Origin: Podarcis filfolensis
Lineage: Eukaryota
Reading direction: 5' to 3' (one strand)
Length of the DNA stretch: 64,000 bases
NCBI GenBank assembly: GCA_964270895.1
Contig: OZ185437.1
The notes beneath the pieces are model-generated. The model was not told where the DNA came from, ran no database searches, and saw only the letters and a list, made by a program, of their open reading frames with translations. A program made the translations under genes and the position numbers. Below, one piece after another: positions 3,001 through 59,540 of this stretch (position 1 is its first letter; every line of letters begins with the position of its first letter).

Positions 3001-4057
3001 ATAGTTTGGCCCTTTTACTGCTAGTCTTGGGTTCAAGACTAAACATGTGCAGTTAACAATTTCTTGCGCTCCCTGCATCTCATTGGTACTCAAATACGGC
3101 AAATTATTAGCTTTCTCTGACCGTAGTCTTTACTTGCAGGCACAACATACTCTTAATTCAACTGGGAAAAGGAAGAATTAAAAGCCTTGTTTGTGTTTTA
3201 ATCTAGGCAAACTTCCTCCTTTTGTCAGCAGGAGGAATCCCTCAGTTAACCTAGCCAGGAATGGCAACTCCAGACATTACGATCACAGTAACTAGGTTAC
3301 AAAGTTAGTAACAGAAAGGCTATTCCCAGGAGCAATGGTTCCAAACTGAACTCTGGAACCACTTTCATTATAGAACTCTAAGGAATGTAAATCTTCAAAC
3401 TTTCAAACCCTCTCCTTTCTTCAGTGTACTATATAATTTAAACTCAGCAATGGACCAAATTAAATATGATGCTTTGGATGCTCCAAACAAAAGAGCTAGC
3501 ATTCAACCTGGGTCCATTAGTGGTTTATAAGATAAGCCACCTCTTTCTTGATTATATTGACTGATGGGAAAGATGAGGCATCTTCACAGTCAACAGTCTG
3601 CCTGACACTTTAATGTGAACACATATGTTTAGGTTTATTCGATTTCTTAGGCACCCTTTTTTGAAAAAAAAAGGGGAAAAGATTCAAGGCATGTTACAGT
3701 AAATAAAATACATGAAAGTAAAAACAAGAACAGTACAACACCCAGAACGTACGAAAACCACACTATCTCCCCATCCCCAAGTGAGAAATTACCGGGAATA
3801 ATCCAGTCAGAGTTCTGGATTGCTGCCTAAAACATTTTAAAACTGGCTTATGTTATGGCTCAAGGAGGATAAAAATAACTTGCTTAGATTGTCACTTGTC
3901 TGAAGTATGACCTTGCCTACAAAGGTAGGCAGGGCCCAATGAAAGACTGAACAGAAATCAGTGGTGTTTCCATCTTACAGCAGTGGACAAAATTGTGACC
4001 CACAACAATTTATTCCAAATCCTCAACAAATCACGCATGAAGAAGCCATTTCAGGTT

Positions 4058-4790
4058 CATGAGGACCAGGTGTGCAACCTGGGGGTCATTTTGGATTCAC
4101 AGCTGCCCATGGAGGCACAGGTTAATTCCGTGTCCAGGGCAGCTGTCTACCAGCTCTACCTGTTACACAGGCTGAGACCCTACCTGCCTGCGCACTGTCA
4201 TGCCAGAGTGGTGCATGCTCAGGTTATCTCCCGCTTGGACTACTGCAATGCGCTCTATGTGAGGCTATCTTTGAAGGTGACTCGGAAACTACAACTAATC
4301 CAGAATATGGCAGCTAGACTGGTGACTGGGAGCAGCCACTAGGACCATATAACACCAGTCCTAAAGGATCTACGCTGGCTTCCGGCACATTTCCAAGCAC
4401 AATTCAAAGTGTTGGCACTGACCTTTAAAGCCCCAAATGACCTTGGTTATGTATACCCAAATGAGCACGCTCACCCCCATCATTCAGCCCGGACACTGAG
4501 GTCCAGCTTCAAGGGCCTTCTGGCAGTTTCCTCATTGCAAGAAGTGAGGTTACAGGGAACCGGGCAGCGGGCCCCTGGTAGTGGGCTCATACTGTGGAAC
4601 ACCTTCTCATCAAATGTTTAGATAAATAACTATACAACTTGTAGAAGACATCTGAAGGCAGCCCTGTATAGGGAAGCTTTTTATGTTTGATGTATCTGTT
4701 TTCATATCTGTTGGAAGCTGCCCAGAGTGGCTGGGGCAACTCAGTCAAATGGGTATAGTACAAATAATAAAATTATTATCATTATTATTA
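4058..4790 (+). mobile_element. L2-type LINE 3' fragment (degraded RT C-terminus + tail)
   Basis: NLGVILDSQL...SRLDYCNALY...LQLIQNMAARLVTG followed by stops, then an (ATT)n-like tail at ~4765-4790. Confidence 0.85.
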
Positions 4791-6633
4791 GGGAAACCTC
4801 TATTGACCGTTGAAAGCACAAGTTCTGTTAGAGTATAATTTCTACAGTACATACTCCGATTGTGAATTTCTAAAACAAGCAGTTTTGTTACTAATCTTCC
4901 TGCTTGATAAGCAGTATTATTATTTTGGAAACAACACTCTTATTAAAGCACAAAAGGGGGTATGAAATTGTTTTCTGAAATGGTTGTGTTTGCTCCTTAA
5001 TTCACTGTGGGTATCATCTGCTGTATCACACAAGTATTTTTAAAAGATGGATACAGTATTCAGCTGAAAGGCTCTTTGACCCAGTGAAGCTTTTTAGCAG
5101 AACAGGGATCATAGGGATTTCTTCTTCCCCTGCCTGCCCCTTTAGAACAGCGTGAGGAGCTGCAGGAGAGAGCGGGAAATCACCAATCATTGCCTGCATA
5201 CTTGCTCCACTGAATCAATAGCCTCTTGTCAGAGGACCCCCAAATCGATATATTCAGATCCCTTTCCCCCTTATAAGCATGTGACTTGATTTCTTGTGAT
5301 GTATGCAATTGCAGCTGTGATGCTGTGAAACAGGGTACCTTCATTTTGAGAGGCAGGTTTTGTTCAAGTCACCACTTCAACAATGGAATTTCTTGTTTTA
5401 ATGAGAAACAAATGCAATTACCATGGTTAATTACCCTTGTTTAATTTGGGAAGCCGCAGGCAAGTAAATTATTATATTTAAAACTCCAATTCTCATTCAA
5501 ACTGCGGGTTCCTGTTTCATGGGGCTGCAGAACTTGTGAAGCAGTGCGGATGGGTATTATAGGTGTGATAAACAGGAACATTTTCCATGCACCTAGGCCA
5601 ACGAGAGTAGCCAGTTGGCATTTTTCACCATACTGAAGCTCGGTCAGCTTTTAAAAGGACAGAAATTCCCAGAATAGTGTTGCTGAGTGAATAACTTCTC
5701 AAAAGTGGCTTGGCTTTCCTACAATGTTAGTTCTAAAACACACTTTTCATTGCAGCCAATTTATAGATTGTGACTCATCTGCCCTAATGTCATTGACCAG
5801 ACACAATCTTTGTCAGACTGAGCAAACGAGGGGGGTTGGGAGCAAGCAAGTAATTTCCTTGGCTTCCTTTTTCTCCCAGCGTGGGATCTTTTTTTCAAGC
5901 CTACGTTTATAGTACATGACCATTCTCGTAAACAACTTTTATGTTCCAGGCAACCAAAAAAGGAAGAAAAAGGCTGGTTGTACCAACGGATGCTTTGCAG
6001 GCCAAGTCCAGCTCCTTGAAACAGTTGAAACTCTTGTTGTGACTGAACCAGCAGCTTAGAGCTTAGACAAACACACACATGTATTGCTTATTTGTACTAT
6101 GTTTTAGCTCAGATTTTCTTTGCCTTATGAGTAACGATGTTAGAAAAAGTTGCTTAAACAGAAATAAACATGATCTTAAAAATCTGTAAAGAAGTCTAAA
6201 GCAGCTTAAAGATAGCTACATCCATCACCCCAATAAAGTGAGGCATCCATGTTTACATGCCATCCATGCACAAGCTTTAGCTCTAGCAACCTAAGGGAAA
6301 CTGCCAAGCCTCTGAGCCTCAGGGAGGACTAGCACTAAATCAAGGGCAACAATCATAAAACAACTCAGAATACATCCCCAAAGTCTGCTTTGGAAAGATT
6401 AAGTGGCATGGGATCTGCCAAATGGATTTATAATCCAGCGTTTTCGTCACAGAAAACCCATGCGTTACAGCACAATCCTTTACTTGTGTACTCAGAAGCC
6501 ATTGAGTTCAATGGGGCTTTCTCTTAGATAGGTATATGATTACATCCTTAAGTAACTTATCCCCATTTTACAAGGGAAGAATCACAATCTGCAATATTTA
6601 ATAAAATAATAAGATACTAAATACAGACAAATA

Positions 6634-7984
6634 CCGTATTTTTCGCACCATAGGACGCACTTTTTCCCCTCCAAAAATGAAGGGGAAATGTGTGTGCGTC
6701 CTATGGTGCGAATGCAGGCTTTCGCTGAAGCCTGGAGAGTGAGAGAGGTTGGTGCGCACCGACCCCTCACGCTCTCCAGGCTTCGCACACCTCTCTGCAA
6801 GCAGCGGGAGCCCAGCGCTGGGCTCCCGCTGCTTGCGGAGACTTGCCTGCATGCCGAAGCCTGTGCGCGCTGAACTCAGCGCGTCCAGGCTTCGCGGACC
6901 TCTCCGCAAGCAGTGAGAGCGCTCCCGCTGCTTGCGGAGAGTTGCCAGCATGCGGAAGCCTGCGCGCGCTGAGATCAGCGCGCCCAGGCTTCGCGGACCT
7001 CTCCGCAAACAGCGGGAGCGCTCCCGCTGCTTGCGGAGAGTTGCCTGCATGCCGAAGCCTGTGCGCGCTGAACTCAGCGCGTCCAGGCTTCGCGGACCTC
7101 TCCGCAAGCAGTGAGAGCGCTCCCGCTGCTTGCGGAGAGTTGCCAGCATGCGGAAGCCTGCGCGCGCTGAGATCAGCGCGCCCAGGCTTCGCGGACCTCT
7201 CCGCAAACAGCGGGAGCGCTCCCGCTGCTTGCGGAGAGTTGCCAGCATGCAGAAGCCTGCGCGCGCTGAGATCAGCGCGCCCAGGCTTCGCGGACCTCTC
7301 CGCAAACAGCGGGAGCGCTCCCGCTGCTTGCGGAGAGTTGCCAGCATGCCGAAGCCTGTGCGCGCTGAGATCAGCGCGCCCAGGCTTCGCGGACCTCTCC
7401 GCAAACAGCGGGAGCGGTCCCGCTGCTTGCGGAGAGTTGCCAGCATGCAGAAGCCTGCGCGCGCTGAGATCAGCGCGCCCAGGCTTCGCGGACCTCTCCG
7501 CAAACAGCGGGAGCGCTCCCGCTGCTTGCGGAGAGTTGCCAGCATGCCGAAGCCTGCGCGCGCTGAGATCAGCGCGCCCAGGCTTCGCGGACCTCTCCGC
7601 AAACAGCGGGAGCGCTCCCGCTGCTTGCGGAGAGTTGCCAGCATGCCGAAGCCTGCGCGCGCTGAGATCAGCGCGCCCAGGCTTCGCGGACCTCTCCGCA
7701 AACAGCGGGAGCGGTCCCGCTGCTTGCAGAGAGTTGCCAGCATGCCGAAGCCTGCGCGCGCCGAGATCAGCACGTCCAGGCTTCGCGGACCTCTCCGCAA
7801 GCAGTGGGAGCGCTCCCACGGCTTGCAGAGAGCTGCCTGTTTGGGGGCTGGGGTCGGGGGAAGCTCGAGCTTCCCCCGCCCCAGCCCCGCGCCTGGGGGG
7901 GAAATAATTTTCCCCCTTTATTTCCCCCCCAAAAAACTGGGTGCGCCCTATGGTCTGGTGCGCCCTATGGTGCGAAAAATACGG
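6634..7984. mobile_element. Non-autonomous TcMar/Tc2-like DNA transposon (MITE) with internal minisatellite
   Basis: 27-bp TIRs CCGTATTTTTCGCACCATAGG(A/G)CGCAC (26/27 identical), TA on both flanks (6632-33, 7985-86), subterminal GTGCG(C/T)CCTATGGT repeats; CCGTA termini typify Tc2/Kanga-like elements. Confidence 0.88.
6780..7837. repeat. 99-bp GC/CpG-rich tandem minisatellite, ~10.5 copies
   Basis: GCTTCGC unit starts at 6780, 6889, 6988, 7087, 7186, 7285, 7384, 7483, 7582, 7681, 7780; first unit is 109 bp. Confidence 0.97.
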
Positions 7985-10087
7985 TAACATCTGTAAATTT
8001 AAAAGAGCAGATCAATCACCAGAATCTATTCTACAGGGGTGGCTAACATAAGAGTAATCAAGATTCCTAAGCCTAACAGCTCCATACAAAAACAAACAAA
8101 CTCATATAGCTGATAAACACAGCACCCACCTCAATTATGTCTGTTCTGGGACCCTGCTCTCAATCTTTGGGCATTCCCAATAATCCCTGCTAACACTGTT
8201 TCTAGAGAAAGGGCATGGCTAAATGATGATTCATCTCCACTTTCCTAACAAACCCCAGTTCCATGGAACCAATGTTAAGAATTTTCAGGATAGGTTCATA
8301 TGCTATCACAGTATTCTGCGATGGTATGTTGGTTTTGGTTAGGTCAGGGGTGGAGAACCTTTTTTAGTTCAAGGACCACAATCACTTTGGGGTGGGGGGA
8401 AGGACATGAGAGTGATGAATGGGTCCAAATGCAAAAGTAGGTGTAGCAATGCATGCAAATTTTAACTTTGTGCAGTACACACACTCACACACCTCTTTCT
8501 ATCCTCCATCCACGGCAAGCAAAAGGCAGCTCAAAGATATGCATACCAGCAAGTAAAAACACTCAAGGGGTGTGGCCAGAATGTACTTGTGTTGTGTGGA
8601 GAGACCTTGAAGAGCCAGCCAATGAGACTTGGAGAGTTGTATTTGGTCCCCAGGACTGAAGTTAAGCGCTATTTGCAGGGAAATGAAGTTGGAATTGAGC
8701 CCTGTGTAAAAATATTATTCCTTCCACATGTGGGTTCCACTTCAACCATCTTTCTGCTTAATAAGAGACCTCCAAGGTAGCAAATGATGAGTAAAGATTA
8801 AGGACACACAAACACCTCCCACACACTCCAAAAGACAGTTGTGATTGATGGTAGCTCAGATGCTGCAGGAAGATGAGTATGCAAAATACCCATTTGAGAG
8901 GTGTACTTGAAAGTGATGGCCCAAGCAAGCCAGGAGGATGTTACTTCTAATATGCATTCCCATGTGAAGACATACTATGAAAAATTCCCTCTTAACAGGA
9001 GTATTTGTCTTCTCCACGAAGCTCTTATTGAATCTCAGTGTTTCAACAATTTAATTTTTCAGTGTTGAAAACACATCTGTTAGCATTAACATTTGCCCTG
9101 TGATGTAATTCTGATAAGCTGCTAAACTGATTAATAGATATCAAGTGAGCTACACAAGAGGAAGCTTTACCAGTTTAATAGGATACAAGAATCCAAAATT
9201 TAAACAAGAATGTAAGAATGTTTAAAAATCTATCAAACAGATGTTTTCAGCTATTATTTCAAGACAAAAGATCATACAAAAGACATAATTTATCAAGAGA
9301 AGAGCAGACATTAACAGCAAACATTTAAATATAAACAAGCAAATTATTTTCAGATTTCTATAACATAATATCACAGCATAAATAACTAGAAAATGATTAC
9401 AAATGCCAAAGTGGTGTCTAAAAATAAGTAGCTAGGATTAACTGGTAAAACTTGCATGATAATATGTCAGCACCGCTAGAAGCCCTTTCTGAAAAAAGAT
9501 TTGCTTACTCACTAACTTATTTTAGTAATTAATTCTAGGAATAAAATGAAGGCAAAAGAATTGCTTCATGATTTTCACACTCTTTTCTGCCATGCAAAGC
9601 TTTCTTTCCTCAATGTCTAGTCAAACACCTTGAGCAAACAAGTCTCATGTTGGTTTAGGAATGTCAGGGATAACTCAGATGTACATCAGAGTATGGATAC
9701 TATATACCCATACTCCTTGCTTTCAATGGCATGTGAATCCCCATCCATTTTCTGGCACAACTAGTCATACATTAAAAAAAGAAAATCACAAAACAAAAGC
9801 TGTACTGGGGTGTTCATGTTCTTTGGAAGTGCAAAGCTATACTTAATGTAGTGCTTGTGTAAAGTGCAAGTTTTCTTCTTAACAGAAATGTGCTGGAGAA
9901 ATCCACAACCACATAACTTAGTGGAAACTGTTAAAAAGACTTATCAGTTCATGGAAGCCTAATAAGGGTGGGTGTTTAGTGACATCTACAGGAACCTCTG
10001 AACAGTTAGCTATTTCTGTTGTGTTGCTTAGAAAACAAGTAGGTTATGGCCCTCTTCTGGTCTCAAAAGAGCATGAAATCCATTGCT

Positions 10088-10184
10088 TCATTCAAGTTCT
10101 TCAGTTTCTGCTGAGAAAAGGTCTGCGAGATCAGCTACTGTTAACACAGAGGCCTCCGACTGCTTCATGGAAGAACTAGAGTGG
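10088..10184 (-). CDS. SHPRH: SHPRH exon 30 (last coding exon, TGA at 10090-10088; 3' UTR continues leftwards, end not determined)
   Basis: [31 protein letters not shown]. Confidence 0.94.
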
Positions 10185-13100
10185 CTTTGGGGGATGAGGG
10201 AACATCGGAGGGGAGAAGGGAAAAATACATTTTAAAATATGAGAAATATAGCTCACATCTACATTCATTAAATACAAGAGGCAGCTCTACTAAAGAGGTT
10301 GCAATGATCATGGTTGAAAAGGAGAGTCTCAAAAGCACAGCACTGGGTTTTAAAGGTGGACTAAGCTGTCTATTTACCTGAAGAAAATAGTCAAAAGTAG
10401 GTTTGCAAGGACAAGCTGCTGTGAGCTGTTTTCTTTCTAAGCCAGTGTTTTGCTTTAGTCATTTTTGCATTATCAAGGTTCACAAAATTAAGTTGTGAAA
10501 GTTGCTAGGATTTTATATGCAAAAGAATTTTATATTTTTATTGAAACAGCTTTTGTGTATTTAAAGAACCTTGTTATCAACATGCTATGTTACCTACAAA
10601 AGATGGTAAAAAACCAACTTAGATTGCTCTATTATCGTAAAAGCAGACTTACAGAAAAGGCCAATTTGTGCTTGTGAATGGTAAACAGGTATATAGTTCT
10701 CCACCTGTAACAACCTGCGTTGATTTTTGTGCACACTGCTTTGCATGTTACCTGACAATCTGGGCTCACTATGAATATCAGACAATACAAAATTTCAAAG
10801 TAAATTCACTCTGTCTTAATTTTGTTTGGAAAAATGTCCCCAAGCTCTTCAGTTCCAGTAGCCTGAAAATAATGCCAATGAGGAGTCAAGTTTGAACGTA
10901 TGTGATGGCAAACCACCTCACTAGTTTTGATTATAGGGCTTTCTACATACATGAAAGATCTGGAAATACATACAAATCAAAAGGACAAAGAGAACCATTA
11001 CCATAGGATGAGTTTATATCTAAGTGTGCATGCAGTTACTTACTGCCTAGGACTCAAATGTTTGATCCTTAGGGGAACTCTTCTGCTGTAGGGGTTTGAT
11101 TTCCACAATACTTCAAAGGGCTTTATTTTGCTTGGGGAAAGCAATATTCTTTGGGCAACAAGCCCACTTGTTGCATTTGTGAGTACTGTGTAGAAATTCA
11201 TAATCATTTGTGACTGCAGAAATATCACTTGCATAATGCCTCCCCTTGCACCATAATACATTTTTCTTAACATTTTTTTCTGGCTTCTAACACCATGCAT
11301 ATCTACTCAGAAGTAAGTCCTACTGAGTTCACTAGGACTTACTTACATAGCAGTAAGTGTCTAGGATTTCAGTTTCTATGTCTGGGGTAGCTGCCCTTGC
11401 AAATTTGAATACAAATTTGAAAAATGAAATATTGTATAGACAGGCTTTACTTACCTCCTTTCTACAGTTTTCAGCATTGTCTGCATTCTTTCTTCAATTG
11501 TTGCTTTGATTAAGAATCTATGAACAATTGTGGGCCTGAATTTTTTTTTCGGGAAAGAAAAGACTATTCAGCACACGTTGTTATACTTATAGGGATATCC
11601 CTTACAAGTTTATGCAGTAGATCACTTTGTTCAATGGGCTTACTCCCTAGAAAGGGAGTTTAGGATTACAGCCTTCATAGTCTTTATTGTTTACTCTATA
11701 ATAGCTCCAACAACAAGCATGTGATGTGTATTATAAACCACTTATGTTTCAGAAAATGCTAGAATTATAATGTAGCTTTAGGACAATACTGGCTACAGAA
11801 ATTTTGACAGGTGTTGACCAGCCAATGTCATTATGAGATTATTAGCAAGTGGTTGGTTCTGCTGGTACTTCCTGTTTCTACTGACCTGCCACTTACTCTC
11901 AATTTATTGCTGTAAGCTATGTGTAATCCTAATGCTGCATTTATTTAGTTAATTTATTTCATAGAATTTATATACCACTTAACTGTAGAAAACCTCAGAG
12001 TGGTTATACATACACTGCATTCAGTGGCAGTTAGGTGAGCCCAAAACAGTTTTGATCCTTACTTAGTTTGCCCAATGCGATGCACTCTGCCAATGGCCTG
12101 TAGCTCATGTGCTGGATTCAAGATAGGTTCTACTAGGAGGACATGTGTTGCCTCAATAATATTCAATCCATTCGAGCCAGTATGGAGAGGCAATAACAAT
12201 ATGTTGATCTTGGGATCATACTTAAATGCAGATAGATTTTCCTGAAAGGCAAAATAAAGAATAATATTCAAAACTTCACCAGCTCCCTGTATATTTAAGA
12301 ACAAATTCAGTTGCTATAAAGTGTGACAGACCAGTGACACTTGAATCCTAAATTCTTTACAGAGTGGACCTGAGAGGTAATGGATCACACATAACTCGAG
12401 AATACTTAGGGCTGGTGCACATACATCAATAACTCTCTCCTGTTAACAATGACTATAACTATTCCTTCCCTTGCAGATCTGGAAGAATAATTTTCCCTCC
12501 TCACTTCCCTGCGGTTAAGCAGCTCATCACCACTGCAGCAAAGGACCTGAAGCTAGTCAGAAGGGGTTTCAAAGCTTGCATGAAATGGAACCCTTAGCCA
12601 CTGTTAACTTCACAGCAGCAATGAACATGAACAATGGGTGATTAAATTTTAATCCCACGTTATAAATCAAAATTGGCTCCCCAAGCAAACACATGACTAA
12701 TTAAAATCACTGTAAATAATTAAAACACAATAAACAGTCTTAGGCTAGATGTGATGTGAGAGTGTTGAGACAGAGAGAGCAGGTGTGCACTACACCTGAG
12801 CACAGGTATGCGGGAAGGGTGCCTGGGCATGAAGTACAGCTGCAGATGTATTCAGGCATGATAGAGGGTTGCCTGGCTGCTGCCTCCTTTCTTTCTGATG
12901 ACCTCAGAGATTAAATGTGCTAGGTGGGCATGAGGGGGCTTTTCAGATGGAGCTTGGTCCAGACACAATTTGGGGGGAGGGTGTTTACATGCACATTCCT
13001 GAGTTATTTTGACTTGCTTAGCTGCAATTAACAGGGAGTGGGCATTATCTTTCTAGTAGCTCTGAAATTAGCCTAGCTCTCTGACAGTTTAATTCTTTTT

Positions 13101-46559: not shown

Positions 46560-47210
46560 CAGATAATAGGGATACCAACAAGGCCAAGGCGCCGGTAACA
46601 ACGCCCCCCCCATTAAGGCCTATTGCAAGTCATAGACCAACGAAGTAGCTGTCTCTCCCTCTATATATAAAACTATAAACACACACATGTGTGTGTAAGT
46701 GTGTAAGCGACAGGTGGGGGCGAAGCCACTAACTGCAACCTCCCACCCGCTGCTTCTTCTCAGCCTGACGCACCTGAGAGGGTTGGAATCAGCTCCTGGG
46801 GGCTCCTCTCCGGCTTCCCCTTCTGGGCCCTGCGGCGGCGGCGAGGCTGGAAGAAGAGACGAGCTCCTGAGCAGCTCCAAGGAGCGCAGCGACCATCCTT
46901 GAACCAGGAAGAGGAAGACGAAGCGAAGGGAGGGTTGGGGGAGGGGAAAGCCAAACAACAACAAGAAGATTCTCCCCTCAAAGTTCACCCGCCGGACGGA
47001 GGAAGGAGGCGGAAGCCGAGAGTGACGCGAAGGCCCCGCCCACTGCCCCTCTCGCGCTAGCACGCGCCTGCCCCCCCCTCCCACAACGGCGGGGAAGCGC
47101 TGGCGAATGTGCGCGTGCGCGGTGCCTTCTTTTTTCTAAGCCGTGTTTCTGCGGGGAGGACAAACGGAGACGGTTGCGGAACAGGTGCGCTGTAGGACCC
47201 GGTCCACACA
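46560..47210 (-). promoter_or_regulatory. SHPRH: CpG island: SHPRH promoter and non-coding exon 1 (donor CAG|gtgcgt, exon ends at 46774; TSS probably ~47000-47050)
   Basis: Abrupt rise in GC and CpG. GC box ccccgccc at ~47034-47041, ETS-like cggaag at ~47010, NRF1-like gcgcgtgcgc at ~47111. Lies 2.6 kb upstream of the exon 2 acceptor. Confidence 0.8.
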
Positions 47211-47359
47211 GATTAGGTTGCAGTGATGGGTTTAACCAGGATTATTTAGGTTGGTCTTGAGGTTCTGCGAAGGTCTTGAGCCTTATTTTAAAATTATTAT
47301 TTTTACAAAAACCCAACCCCTGTCTTTTCGACTTAAGTTAGATGCAACTTTTTAAAGAT

Positions 47360-58045: not shown

Positions 58046-59179
58046 CACGAATCATCAACAATTTCTGTTTAATCTGGATTGAACCTCTACCACATCTAGT
58101 CCTTCACACTCGGGGGCTGGCATATAGATACAGGTATGGATAAAATACTGTGACGAATGCAGGTAATTCCCGAGGTAGTACGTTTGGATGAACATAAACT
58201 ATGCATTGCTTGAGAGAGACTAAAGCCCCTGAAGAGCATTGAAAACACACAATGTGTCTCAAGGTGCCGGATTATGCATTAAGATATATTTCACATTTGA
58301 AGATGCTTGAAACCACCATGAGATGAAAACTCCCTATTGGCTGAATCTCTGGGGAAGTCTGTGTGATTTGCTTACTTTAAAAAGGGTATATGGAATTCAT
58401 TATGCTAATGAAACAACACCATGGAATTTATATTTCAGTTGGAGATAATATGTGAGGTCATTCAGCCTTCCTGTATTGCTGCAGAGATGTGTTTTAAAAC
58501 TTCTATTTATCAATAATCTTTCTGGAGGAAGCTACAATAACTCTTACTTGTTTTGCCTTAAGGATATCCCTATCTCTCCAAACCATGCTAGAGGCTCCCA
58601 TATTAATCTTAAAGCTGCTGCTCATCCTCATGAGTTTTGCTGGACTTCCAGGAGTCTACATGCTCTATGCATACTGCAGTTTATTATAATACTTTTATAT
58701 GTTCACAGATATATCCTTTGGAATTGAGTTAGTAATGCAGATTGGCCATATCCCAGAAACACCAGATTGTTTCTAAGTAATAGTTGATCTGGCAGTTCTG
58801 CCTCTCAATCTCAGCAAAATGGTTCAGTCTATTGTGAAGATGGGAAACAACTATCCATATTTGGCTCTGTAAAAGCTATGTCGTGGTCTTGGAGTGTTAT
58901 CAAGCTGTGTGTGAGGGAGGTGATCCCACTTTTAGCAGGGAGTGGAGGGATGAGACAGGACTCAGAATTGAAGCTGTGTAGATCAAATGGGTATCCTGTC
59001 CAAGTTGGTGAAATGGGGTATGTTAGCAGCATCCTATGGCTCCTGAGCCATCCTCCTAAGGAGCAGAAGCTTATCCCCTCAGGTATTAAAGGTGCTTTTG
59101 TTGTTCTGCAAATCATGGATGTTCTAGAAAGCATCCTTTATTGGGTATTAAAATTGGGTTGTTGCATGCCTATCAGTTT

Positions 59180-59540
59180 GGGACGCGGGTGGCGCTGTGG
59201 GTAAAACCTCAGCGCCTAGGACTTGCCGATCGTCAGGTCGGTGGTTCGAATCCCCGCGGCGGGGTGCGCTCCCGTTGCTCGGTCCCAGCGCCTGCCAACC
59301 TAGCAGTTCGAAAGCACCCCCGGGTGCAAGTAGATAAATAGGGACCGCTTACTAGCGGGAAGGTAAATGGCGTTTCCGTGTGCTGCTCTGGCTCGCCAGA
59401 TGCAGCTTGTCACGCTGGCCACGTGACCCGGAAGTGTCTGCGGACAGCGCTGGCTCCCGGCCTCTAGAGTGAGATGAGTGCACAACCCTAGAGTCTGTCA
59501 AGACTGGCCCGTACGGGCAGGGGTACCTTTACCTTTACCT
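59180..59540 (+). mobile_element. Full-length Sauria SINE (second subfamily) with 14-bp TSD
   Basis: A box from ~59190, B box 59243-59253, (accttt)n tail; atgcctatca(g/a)ttt at 59166-79 and 59541-54. Confidence 0.95.

What the first reader, a model, noticed from the sequence alone, without database searches (positions are those of the whole stretch)
6634..7984. A Tc2-like MITE carrying an amplified 99-bp minisatellite as cargo
Seen: near-perfect 27-bp TIRs and TA flanks enclose ~10.5 copies of a 99-bp unit, about 1.05 of the 1.35 kb. Established: tandem repeats riding inside MITEs are described in other animals (e.g. Xstir in Xenopus MITEs) and can seed satellite families. Inference: this is a young insertion in which a small internal module expanded locally, so it is a candidate transposon-dispersed satellite family and a presence/absence plus copy-number polymorphism ~2.1 kb from the SHPRH stop codon. 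I cannot tell whether it is already catalogued.
Basis: partly seen in the sequence, partly recalled or inferred. Interest (0 to 1): 0.72.

Follow-up and report, generated by a model that had tools for sequence, protein, structure and literature searches.

The report
Lizard MITE with amplified hairpin repeat
A small non-coding jumping gene of an abundant wall-lizard family inserted, in this lineage only, 2.1 kb past the end of a helicase gene, and one of its own hairpin modules has multiplied to about ten tandem copies; this kind of element is already known in frogs and clams.

Summary
At 6634-7984 there is a 1351-bp element with 27-bp terminal inverted repeats (26/27) and TA on both sides. It encloses a 99-bp tandem array of 10.3 copies (6822-7837, 94% matches).

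Public reads show three things:
- The ends belong to a family of several thousand copies in a related species, and those copies all stop exactly at the TA.
- The site is filled in the window's species (organism A). It is empty in single contigs of two related species (B, C) whose flanks differ by about 2.5-3%.
- Other family copies lack about 800-1200 bp of this interior. The average is roughly one 99-bp unit per close relative.

The unit is not foreign cargo. It is a near-perfect palindrome and is homologous to the element's own module at 6713-6821.

So this is a lineage-specific insertion of a TA-targeting, Tc1/mariner-superfamily MITE whose internal hairpin module was amplified. Three points stay untested:
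- the "Tc2" label;
- polymorphism within the species;
- whether the growth happened at this locus or in the donor copy.

Tandem-repeat-bearing MITEs are a known kind (Xstir, miDNA4, DTC84). This scan has already noted similar array-bearing MITEs elsewhere in this genome. Modest interest; a side point is its CpG-island-like composition.

The parts
6632..6633 (.). Left TA target-site duplication
   Evidence: Seen in the sequence. In one search, 1627 raw reads from other copies align from 6632 onward and then run into unrelated AT-rich flanks (agreement 0.32).
6634..6660 (+). Left 27-bp terminal inverted repeat
   Evidence: exact pattern match with 0 expected by chance; 26/27 against the right TIR.
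6642..6714 (.). Left-end hairpin: the TIR core pairs with an inward inverted copy of the 16-mer GCACCATAGGRCGCAC (6694-6709)
   Evidence: four copies of the 16-mer against 0.01 expected.: -30.8 kcal/mol, z -9.3. This 87-bp end is the most abundant part of the family (depth about 4950 against about 1 in the flanks).
6713..6821 (.). Pre-array module: two hairpins homologous to the 99-bp unit, with a core about 18 nt longer. In effect it is a diverged founding unit.
   Evidence: alignment; fold (-54.8 kcal/mol, z -8.9). Raw-read depth about 1230 in the bin 6722-6807.
6822..7837 (.). 99-bp tandem array, 10.3 units. Units 1-2 and 3-4 form a 198-bp duplicate, units 5-9 are nearly identical, and unit 10 is a diverged edge unit.
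   Evidence: TRF; unit table and distance matrix; unit folds at -45.2 kcal/mol, z -8.4; the unit is about 86% identical to its own reverse complement.
7838..7940 (.). Right internal region: a G/C-run palindrome (about 7845-7888) and a G-run/C-run stem
   Evidence: fold (-49.9 kcal/mol, z -8.4). Depth about 760 in raw reads.
7941..7956 (-). Inner copy of the 16-mer (2 mismatches), in direct orientation next to the TIR copy
7958..7984 (-). Right 27-bp terminal inverted repeat
7985..7986 (.). Right TA target-site duplication
   Evidence: In one search, contigs from other copies (X15, X2, X17) align up to 7986 and then run into unrelated sequence.

Best explanation
[quoted passage not shown] The family belongs to the TA-targeting (Tc1/mariner) superfamily. 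A transposase encoded elsewhere is presumed to have moved the copy by cut-and-paste. That enzyme probably recognises the 27-bp TIR and the 16-mer that occurs twice at each end (inferred). The basic element is about 360-460 bp and holds zero or one 99-bp unit. Here one internal module made of two hairpins was amplified to about ten tandem units. The likely mechanism is replication slippage or unequal exchange, helped by the hairpin- or cruciform-forming palindromes. Amplification went in steps: a 198-bp two-unit duplication, then a run of nearly identical units. The evidence does not decide whether this happened at this locus after insertion (my estimate 55%) or in the donor copy before transposition. 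No function is indicated. The element happens to bring 1.35 kb of CpG-island-like DNA to the gene's 3' side.
For: Shown:
- TIR 26/27, TA on both sides, and a unique pair in the window.
- Precise family-wide ends at the TA. Depth is about 4950 over 6636-6721 against about 0.6-1.3 in the flanks, in raw reads of organism C.
- One contig each of organisms B and C joins 6627 to 7985, skipping 1357 bp. Contigs of organism A run from the flanks into both TIRs with 1 mismatch each.
- Other copies skip 780-1200 bp of this interior, for example 6812->7812, 7047->7842 and 6739->7940.
- Summed array depth of about 89 kb of reads, against about 760-1230 copies of the adjoining parts, gives about 0.7-1.2 units per close relative.
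- Units 1/3 differ at 1 site, units 2/4 at 0 sites, and units 5-9 at 0-3 sites.
- The unit is a near-palindrome and is homologous to 6713-6821.
- There is no transposase domain in the long array ORFs and no Rfam family at threshold.

Inferred: mobilisation in trans, the transposase binding sites, and the slippage mechanism. A stem-loop model for MITE-borne repeats is reviewed in PMC12628747.
Against: - The unit count rests on the assembly alone. Short-read contigs cannot span the array.
- No autonomous partner was found, so the transposase family is inferred only from the TA duplication and the TIRs.
- At the empty sites of B and C there are 8 letters between 6627 and 7985, where a simple empty site predicts 4. 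The tool did not print these letters, so an old insertion followed by excision with a footprint is not strictly excluded.
- Only 19 and 17 bases of the TIRs are bridged by the flank contigs of organism A, fewer than the 31 that the tool advises.
Confidence: 0.85

Rival explanations
1. The long array was already present in the donor copy. A long-array subfamily transposes as such, and nothing expanded at this locus.
For: Both unit variants of this array also occur in organism C, which lacks this locus (depth over both kinds of unit). Other notes of this scan report MITEs of 386-794 bp with arrays of GC-rich palindromes in the same genome. Array growth is therefore recurrent and may precede transposition.
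Against: Average unit content per close relative is only about one. The joints seen are all of the short form. Near-identity of units 5-9 and of the 198-bp duplicate points to very recent growth, but does not say where it took place.
Confidence: 0.4
2. The insertion is old and shared. Organisms B and C lost it by transposase-mediated excision, which left a short footprint.
For: At the empty sites, 8 letters lie between 6627 and 7985, where 4 are expected. Tc1/mariner excision is known to leave footprints of a few bases (established knowledge).
Against: B and C show the same 8-letter state. The alignment stops at 6627, not at 6633, which argues for a flank difference rather than a retained TA plus element termini. 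The TIRs are 26/27 and CpG o/e is 0.96 in a genome at 0.29. The flanks carry other small indels between the species.
Confidence: 0.1
3. The length of the array is an assembly artefact, by over-expansion or mis-joining of a shorter repeat.
For: There is no independent spanning read. The best run of the same species holds only 73% of the sampled words of the stretch.
Against: The array has an ordered, non-random pattern of variants: a two-unit duplicate, private variants in units 5, 6 and 7, and diverged edge units, with no indels. This is what a real array resolved by long reads looks like. Both junctions are confirmed in another data set of the species.
Confidence: 0.07
4. The element is functional for the host. 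It could be a transposon-delivered CpG island or promoter-like cassette, a source of hairpin small RNAs, or a modifier of 3'-end formation of the neighbouring gene.
For: It is the largest CpG-island-like stretch in the window (GC 0.66-0.70, o/e 0.92-1.07). Its hairpins are very stable. It contains a poly(A)-signal hexamer on the gene's strand at 7917.
Against: It is absent from two related species, so nothing conserved depends on it. All Rfam hits are below threshold. Four of 15 unit variants are CpG transitions, which suggests ordinary methylation decay. No expression or methylation data were available.
Confidence: 0.06

Closest known systems
miDNA4 of Xenopus (Scalvenzi and Pollet), as reviewed in PMC12628747
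   Same: It is a Tc1/mariner-type MITE whose interior is a satellite-like unit, present as a single monomer or as an array of variable copy number. It is proposed as a route from MITE to satellite DNA.
   Different: In miDNA4 the repeat is thought to be a captured, pre-existing tandem repeat flanked by AT-rich microhomologies. Here the unit is GC-rich, is itself a palindrome, and is homologous to the element's own neighbouring module. Sequence relatedness was not tested.
Xstir MITEs of Xenopus (Hikosaka and Kawahara 2004), as reviewed in PMC12628747
   Same: Tandem repeats derive from internal MITE sequence, and a stem-loop model explains their growth. MITE, composite and array forms coexist.
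   Different: Xstir also occurs as free tandem arrays; none was looked for here. The host and the sequence are different.
DTC84 of the clam Donax trunculus (PMC3879986)
   Same: It is a high-copy composite MITE with a central region of a variable number of tandem units (abstract listed).
   Different: It is a bivalve element with a different architecture and up to about five units. It has no palindromic unit as far as the abstract tells.
Tc2 group of the Tc1/mariner superfamily
   Same: TA target-site duplication and short perfect TIRs (my recollection of the group). Anolis has non-autonomous TcMar families with ends like the Tc2-related DNA5_Xt of frog (PMC3014272).
   Different: No Tc2 consensus or transposase was available for comparison, so the label is unverified.

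Membership tests
Tc1/mariner-superfamily non-autonomous element (MITE) | 2-bp TA target-site duplication | tested here: met
   TA lies at 6632-33 and 7985-86. A 3-bp duplication is excluded (ATA against TAA). Family-wide, read alignments start at the T of the TA (1627 reads), and only 463 extend one base further.
Tc1/mariner-superfamily non-autonomous element (MITE) | Terminal inverted repeats | tested here: met
   27 bp, 26/27 identical.
Tc1/mariner-superfamily non-autonomous element (MITE) | No transposase coding capacity; small size | tested here: met
   The long ORFs are open only because 99 = 3 x 33, and they give only repeat-driven Pfam hits with no DDE or HTH transposase domain. The inferred basic element is about 360-460 bp (joints). 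This copy is 1351 bp only because of the array.
Tc1/mariner-superfamily non-autonomous element (MITE) | Many dispersed copies with identical precise ends; evidence of mobility (empty site) | tested here: met
   Depth is about 4950 at the left end against about 1 in the flanks in organism C. Empty orthologous sites occur in single contigs of organisms B and C.
Tc1/mariner-superfamily non-autonomous element (MITE) | Cognate autonomous element with the same TIRs encoding a DD(E/D) transposase | not testable with these tools
   There is no other copy in the window. Pattern scans gave one truncated end in a metagenome contig (L001) and nothing in the viral or prokaryotic collections.
Tc2 group | TIR or sequence similarity to a Tc2-group consensus, or a Tc2-clade transposase partner | not testable with these tools
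   Dfam and Repbase are not available. The TIR strings occur in no held paper.
Tandem-repeat-containing MITEs (Xstir / miDNA4 / DTC84 type) | Tandem array lying between the MITE termini | tested here: met
Tandem-repeat-containing MITEs (Xstir / miDNA4 / DTC84 type) | Unit number varies among copies of the family | tested here: met
   Joints in other copies skip 780-1200 bp of this interior in organisms A, B and C. The mean is about one unit per close relative. Exact counts per copy could not be tabulated.
Tandem-repeat-containing MITEs (Xstir / miDNA4 / DTC84 type) | Free-standing satellite arrays of the same unit without MITE ends | not tested
   This needs the whole assembly or long reads.
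CpG island (compositional definition) | More than 500 bp with GC >= 0.55 and CpG o/e >= 0.65 | tested here: met
   All 500-bp windows from 6601 to 8100 qualify (GC 0.59-0.70, o/e 0.84-1.07). The window overall has GC 0.40 and o/e 0.29. The unmethylated state was not testable.

The most novel reading that the evidence does not exclude
A recently active Tc1/mariner MITE family of wall lizards repeatedly grows cruciform-prone, CpG-island-like minisatellites from its own hairpin module and drops them at new loci. That would be the birth of a transposon-dispersed satellite caught in progress in a squamate, with species-specific copies that could alter chromatin or 3'-end processing of nearby genes such as this helicase gene.
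Probability: 0.12. Interest if true: 0.6.

Novelty: new member of a known kind. Interest (0 to 1): 0.3.

Why it matters
It gives a clean, datable example in a reptile of a MITE whose internal hairpin module amplifies into a minisatellite. The orthologous sites are empty in two related species. The same route from transposon to satellite DNA is described for Xenopus and for bivalves. In practice it is a ready presence/absence and length marker for wall-lizard population work. It also shows how a transposon can place 1.35 kb of CpG-island-like, hairpin-forming DNA next to a gene. Nothing here suggests a host function, and the family is probably already in automated repeat libraries.

Tried and rejected
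- Other copies in the window: none.
- Earlier scan notes by sequence: blank.
- Literature: nothing on Podarcis MITEs. TcMar-Tc2 together with MITE returned only a ciliate paper. The TIR strings and related strings occur in no held paper. The Zootoca Tc1/mariner fragment (PMC10058329) is a different, Mariner-N5_PM-like element. The Podarcis cretensis genome paper gives only class totals.
- TIR pattern scans for an autonomous partner: one truncated end in a metagenome contig and none in the viral or prokaryotic genome collections.
- Rfam: only sub-threshold miRNA-like hairpin matches; rejected as a known RNA.
- Coding repeat: rejected. Long ORFs are open in several frames on both strands, and Pfam gives only composition- or repeat-driven hits.
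- Contig word-depths as copy numbers: rejected. They exceed the raw-read estimate about 15-20-fold, so only raw-read depth was used.
- The large protein searches were not used, because no protein question was at stake.

Full report
**1. The observation**

The stretch 6634-7984 (1351 bp) begins and ends with a 27-bp inverted repeat. The two arms agree at 26 of 27 positions. With up to 3 mismatches allowed, this is the only pair in the 64-kb window, and none is expected by chance. TA lies directly outside both ends, at 6632-6633 and 7985-7986. A 3-bp duplication does not fit, since the flanks read ATA and TAA.

Tandem Repeats Finder reports one array inside the element: 6822-7837, period 99, 10.3 copies, 94% matches, no indels, score 1794. 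It is the only large array in the window.

The distance to the gene is also right. On the - strand, an exon at 12062-12313 carries Pfam Helicase_C (protein atlas). The last coding stretch ends at 10091, with the stop at 10088-10090. That puts the stop 2104 bp from the element, which lies downstream of it in the gene's sense. I did not test the name SHPRH beyond this.

**2. Anatomy**

- **Repeated 16-mer.** A 16-mer from the TIR core occurs twice at each end, four copies against 0.01 expected. On the left, the inner copy is inverted and forms a strong hairpin with the TIR (6634-6720, -30.8 kcal/mol, z -9.3). On the right, the two copies are direct neighbours.
- **The 99-bp unit is a palindrome.** It is about 86% identical to its own reverse complement, apart from a 7-nt asymmetric bulge. 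As single-stranded DNA it folds at -45.2 kcal/mol (z -8.4).
- **The unit is not foreign.** The module just left of the array (6713-6821) has the same two-hairpin design and the same hairpin borders, with a core about 18 nt longer. The array is an amplification of the element's own interior, not captured cargo.
- **Order within the array.** Units 1 and 3 differ at 1 site and units 2 and 4 at none, which marks a 198-bp two-unit duplication. Units 5-9 differ at 0-3 sites. Unit 10 is a diverged edge unit. This pattern is usual for recent stepwise growth by slippage or unequal exchange.
- **Composition.** The element has GC 0.66 and CpG o/e 0.96, against 0.40 and 0.29 for the window. It is the largest stretch in the window that meets compositional CpG-island criteria. 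Of 15 variant sites among the units, 4 are CpG transitions, so ordinary CpG decay seems to act on it.
- **Coding and RNA.** The long ORFs in the array are a by-product of 99 = 3 x 33 and a lack of stop codons. They are open in several frames on both strands and give no transposase domain. Rfam gives only sub-threshold miRNA-like hairpin matches.

**3. Evidence from public reads**

I laid contigs of organisms A, B and C (names coded) and raw Hi-C reads of organism C on 6034-8584.

- **Organism A.** Single-copy contigs match the flanks with one mismatch each and run into both TIRs (6034-6652 and 7968-8584). The site is filled in this data set. It differs from the window at 6374 and 8265, so it is not simply the same sequence. 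The contigs reach only 19 and 17 bases into the repeat.
- **Organisms B and C.** One contig in each species carries both flanks and joins 6627 to 7985, skipping 1357 bp. The flanks differ from the window by about 2.5-3% and share a 10-bp insertion behind 6402. The orthologous site is empty in two related species.
- **A caveat on the empty site.** There are 8 letters between the two sides, where a plain empty site predicts 4, and the tool did not print them. A small flank indel is the simplest reading. An excision footprint is not strictly excluded.
- **Copy number in organism C.** In the raw reads the flanks have a depth of about 0.6-1.3. The left 87 bp has about 4950. The segment 6722-6807 has about 1230, and the right end about 750. 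These figures mean several thousand ends of a broader family and of the order of a thousand close relatives.
- **Ends and interiors of other copies.** Read alignments from other copies begin at the T of the TA and end at the A of the other TA, then run into unrelated AT-rich sequence. This confirms the exact ends and the TA duplication for the whole family. Most copies diverge after 6720 into a different interior (1785 reads with a common continuation).
- **Units genome-wide.** Over the array, the summed depth amounts to about 89 kb of reads, or roughly 700-1500 units per genome of organism C. That is about 0.7-1.2 units per close relative.
- **Shorter copies.** Joints in contigs and reads of other copies skip 780-1200 bp of this interior (6812->7812, 6784->7809, 7047->7842, 6739->7940). 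Copies with zero to two units therefore exist in all three species. From the 6812->7812 joint the basic element is about 360 bp.

**4. What it is and how it works**

This is a lineage-specific insertion of a non-autonomous DNA transposon of the TA-targeting Tc1/mariner superfamily. The features shown here are the TIRs, the TA duplication, the precise family-wide ends, the high copy number, the empty sites and the lack of coding capacity.

Mobilisation in trans by a transposase that binds the TIR and the repeated 16-mer is inferred. The internal hairpin module was amplified about ten-fold over the family average. The likely mechanism is replication slippage or unequal sister-chromatid exchange, favoured by hairpin or cruciform formation. 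This agrees with the stem-loop model proposed for Xstir (PMC12628747).

The data do not say whether the growth took place at this locus or in the donor copy. I put it at roughly 55:40, with the remainder for an assembly artefact.

**5. Comparison with what is known**

Tandem-repeat-bearing MITEs are well described:
- Xstir and the Tc1/mariner MITE miDNA4 in Xenopus (PMC12628747);
- DTC84 in a clam (PMC3879986).

The present element works like these and fits the defining features I could test. It differs from miDNA4 in that its unit is a GC-rich palindrome derived from the element itself.

The 'Tc2' label could not be tested. Dfam and Repbase are not available, no autonomous partner was found, and no held paper contains the TIR strings. 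The Anolis DNA-transposon survey only mentions a TcMar family with ends like a Tc2-related frog element (PMC3014272). I found no paper on MITEs of wall lizards.

One metagenome contig from an unidentified, AT-rich, ORF-poor source carries TA plus a TIR that is 25/27 identical, followed by subterminal copies of the same motif and an otherwise unrelated interior. The contig ends there (L001). This suggests that the TIR type is used outside lizards.

**6. Earlier notes of this scan**

The same stretch was also noted as a chain of palindromes (s1-302416), which I confirm. Elsewhere in this genome the scan noted MITEs of 386-794 bp filled with GC-rich palindrome arrays (s1-302373, s1-307139, s1-287825) and a CpG-rich MITE family (s1-287844). 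One follow-up called them the internal repeat of an abundant wall-lizard transposon. The scan has thus found this kind of element before on other DNA of this genome. I could not compare sequences, so I cannot say whether they belong to the same family.

**7. Verdict**

Still untested are the Tc2 label, growth at this locus as opposed to the donor copy, polymorphism within the species, and free satellite arrays. It is a new member of a known kind, of modest interest. The CpG-island-like composition and the clean filled and empty sites are the most useful points.

Noticed in passing
L001:6288-6403: A metagenome contig (GC 0.38, CpG o/e 0.86, no long ORFs; source organism unknown) ends in TA plus a TIR 25/27 identical to the lizard TIR. 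Subterminal copies of the same motif follow, and the interior is otherwise unrelated. The TIR type seems to be shared with a distant eukaryote.
   Followed up: partly
window 46601-47300 and 59001-59500: These are the only other stretches in the window that meet compositional CpG-island criteria (GC 0.55-0.64, o/e 0.68-0.86). Both are weaker and shorter than the MITE. The first could be the promoter of the helicase gene on the - strand.
   Followed up: no
window 6402-6412: Organisms B and C share a 10-bp insertion behind 6402 that repeats the following 10 bases of the window. It is either a tandem duplication in them or a deletion in the window's species.
   Followed up: no
window 6627-6633 / 7985: The empty sites of organisms B and C have 8 letters where 4 are expected. 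The letters were not printed, so a flank indel and an excision footprint cannot be told apart.
   Followed up: partly
window 9050, 9174, 7917, 6597 (- strand): Poly(A)-signal hexamers lie downstream of the helicase gene's stop codon. Two are about 0.9-1.0 kb after the stop, one is inside the MITE, and one is just beyond it. Whether the 3' UTR reaches the element is unknown.
   Followed up: no
window 8442-8527 and 6464-6549: Depth is raised in contigs and raw reads of all species (about 5-25 times the flank level). Other moderately repeated sequences probably sit next to the insertion site.
   Followed up: no
window 3983-4342 (+): A 119-aa ORF lies in a locally GC-richer block (GC 0.50) and has no Pfam match. 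It looks to me like a retroposon-derived tail, but this was not tested.
   Followed up: partly
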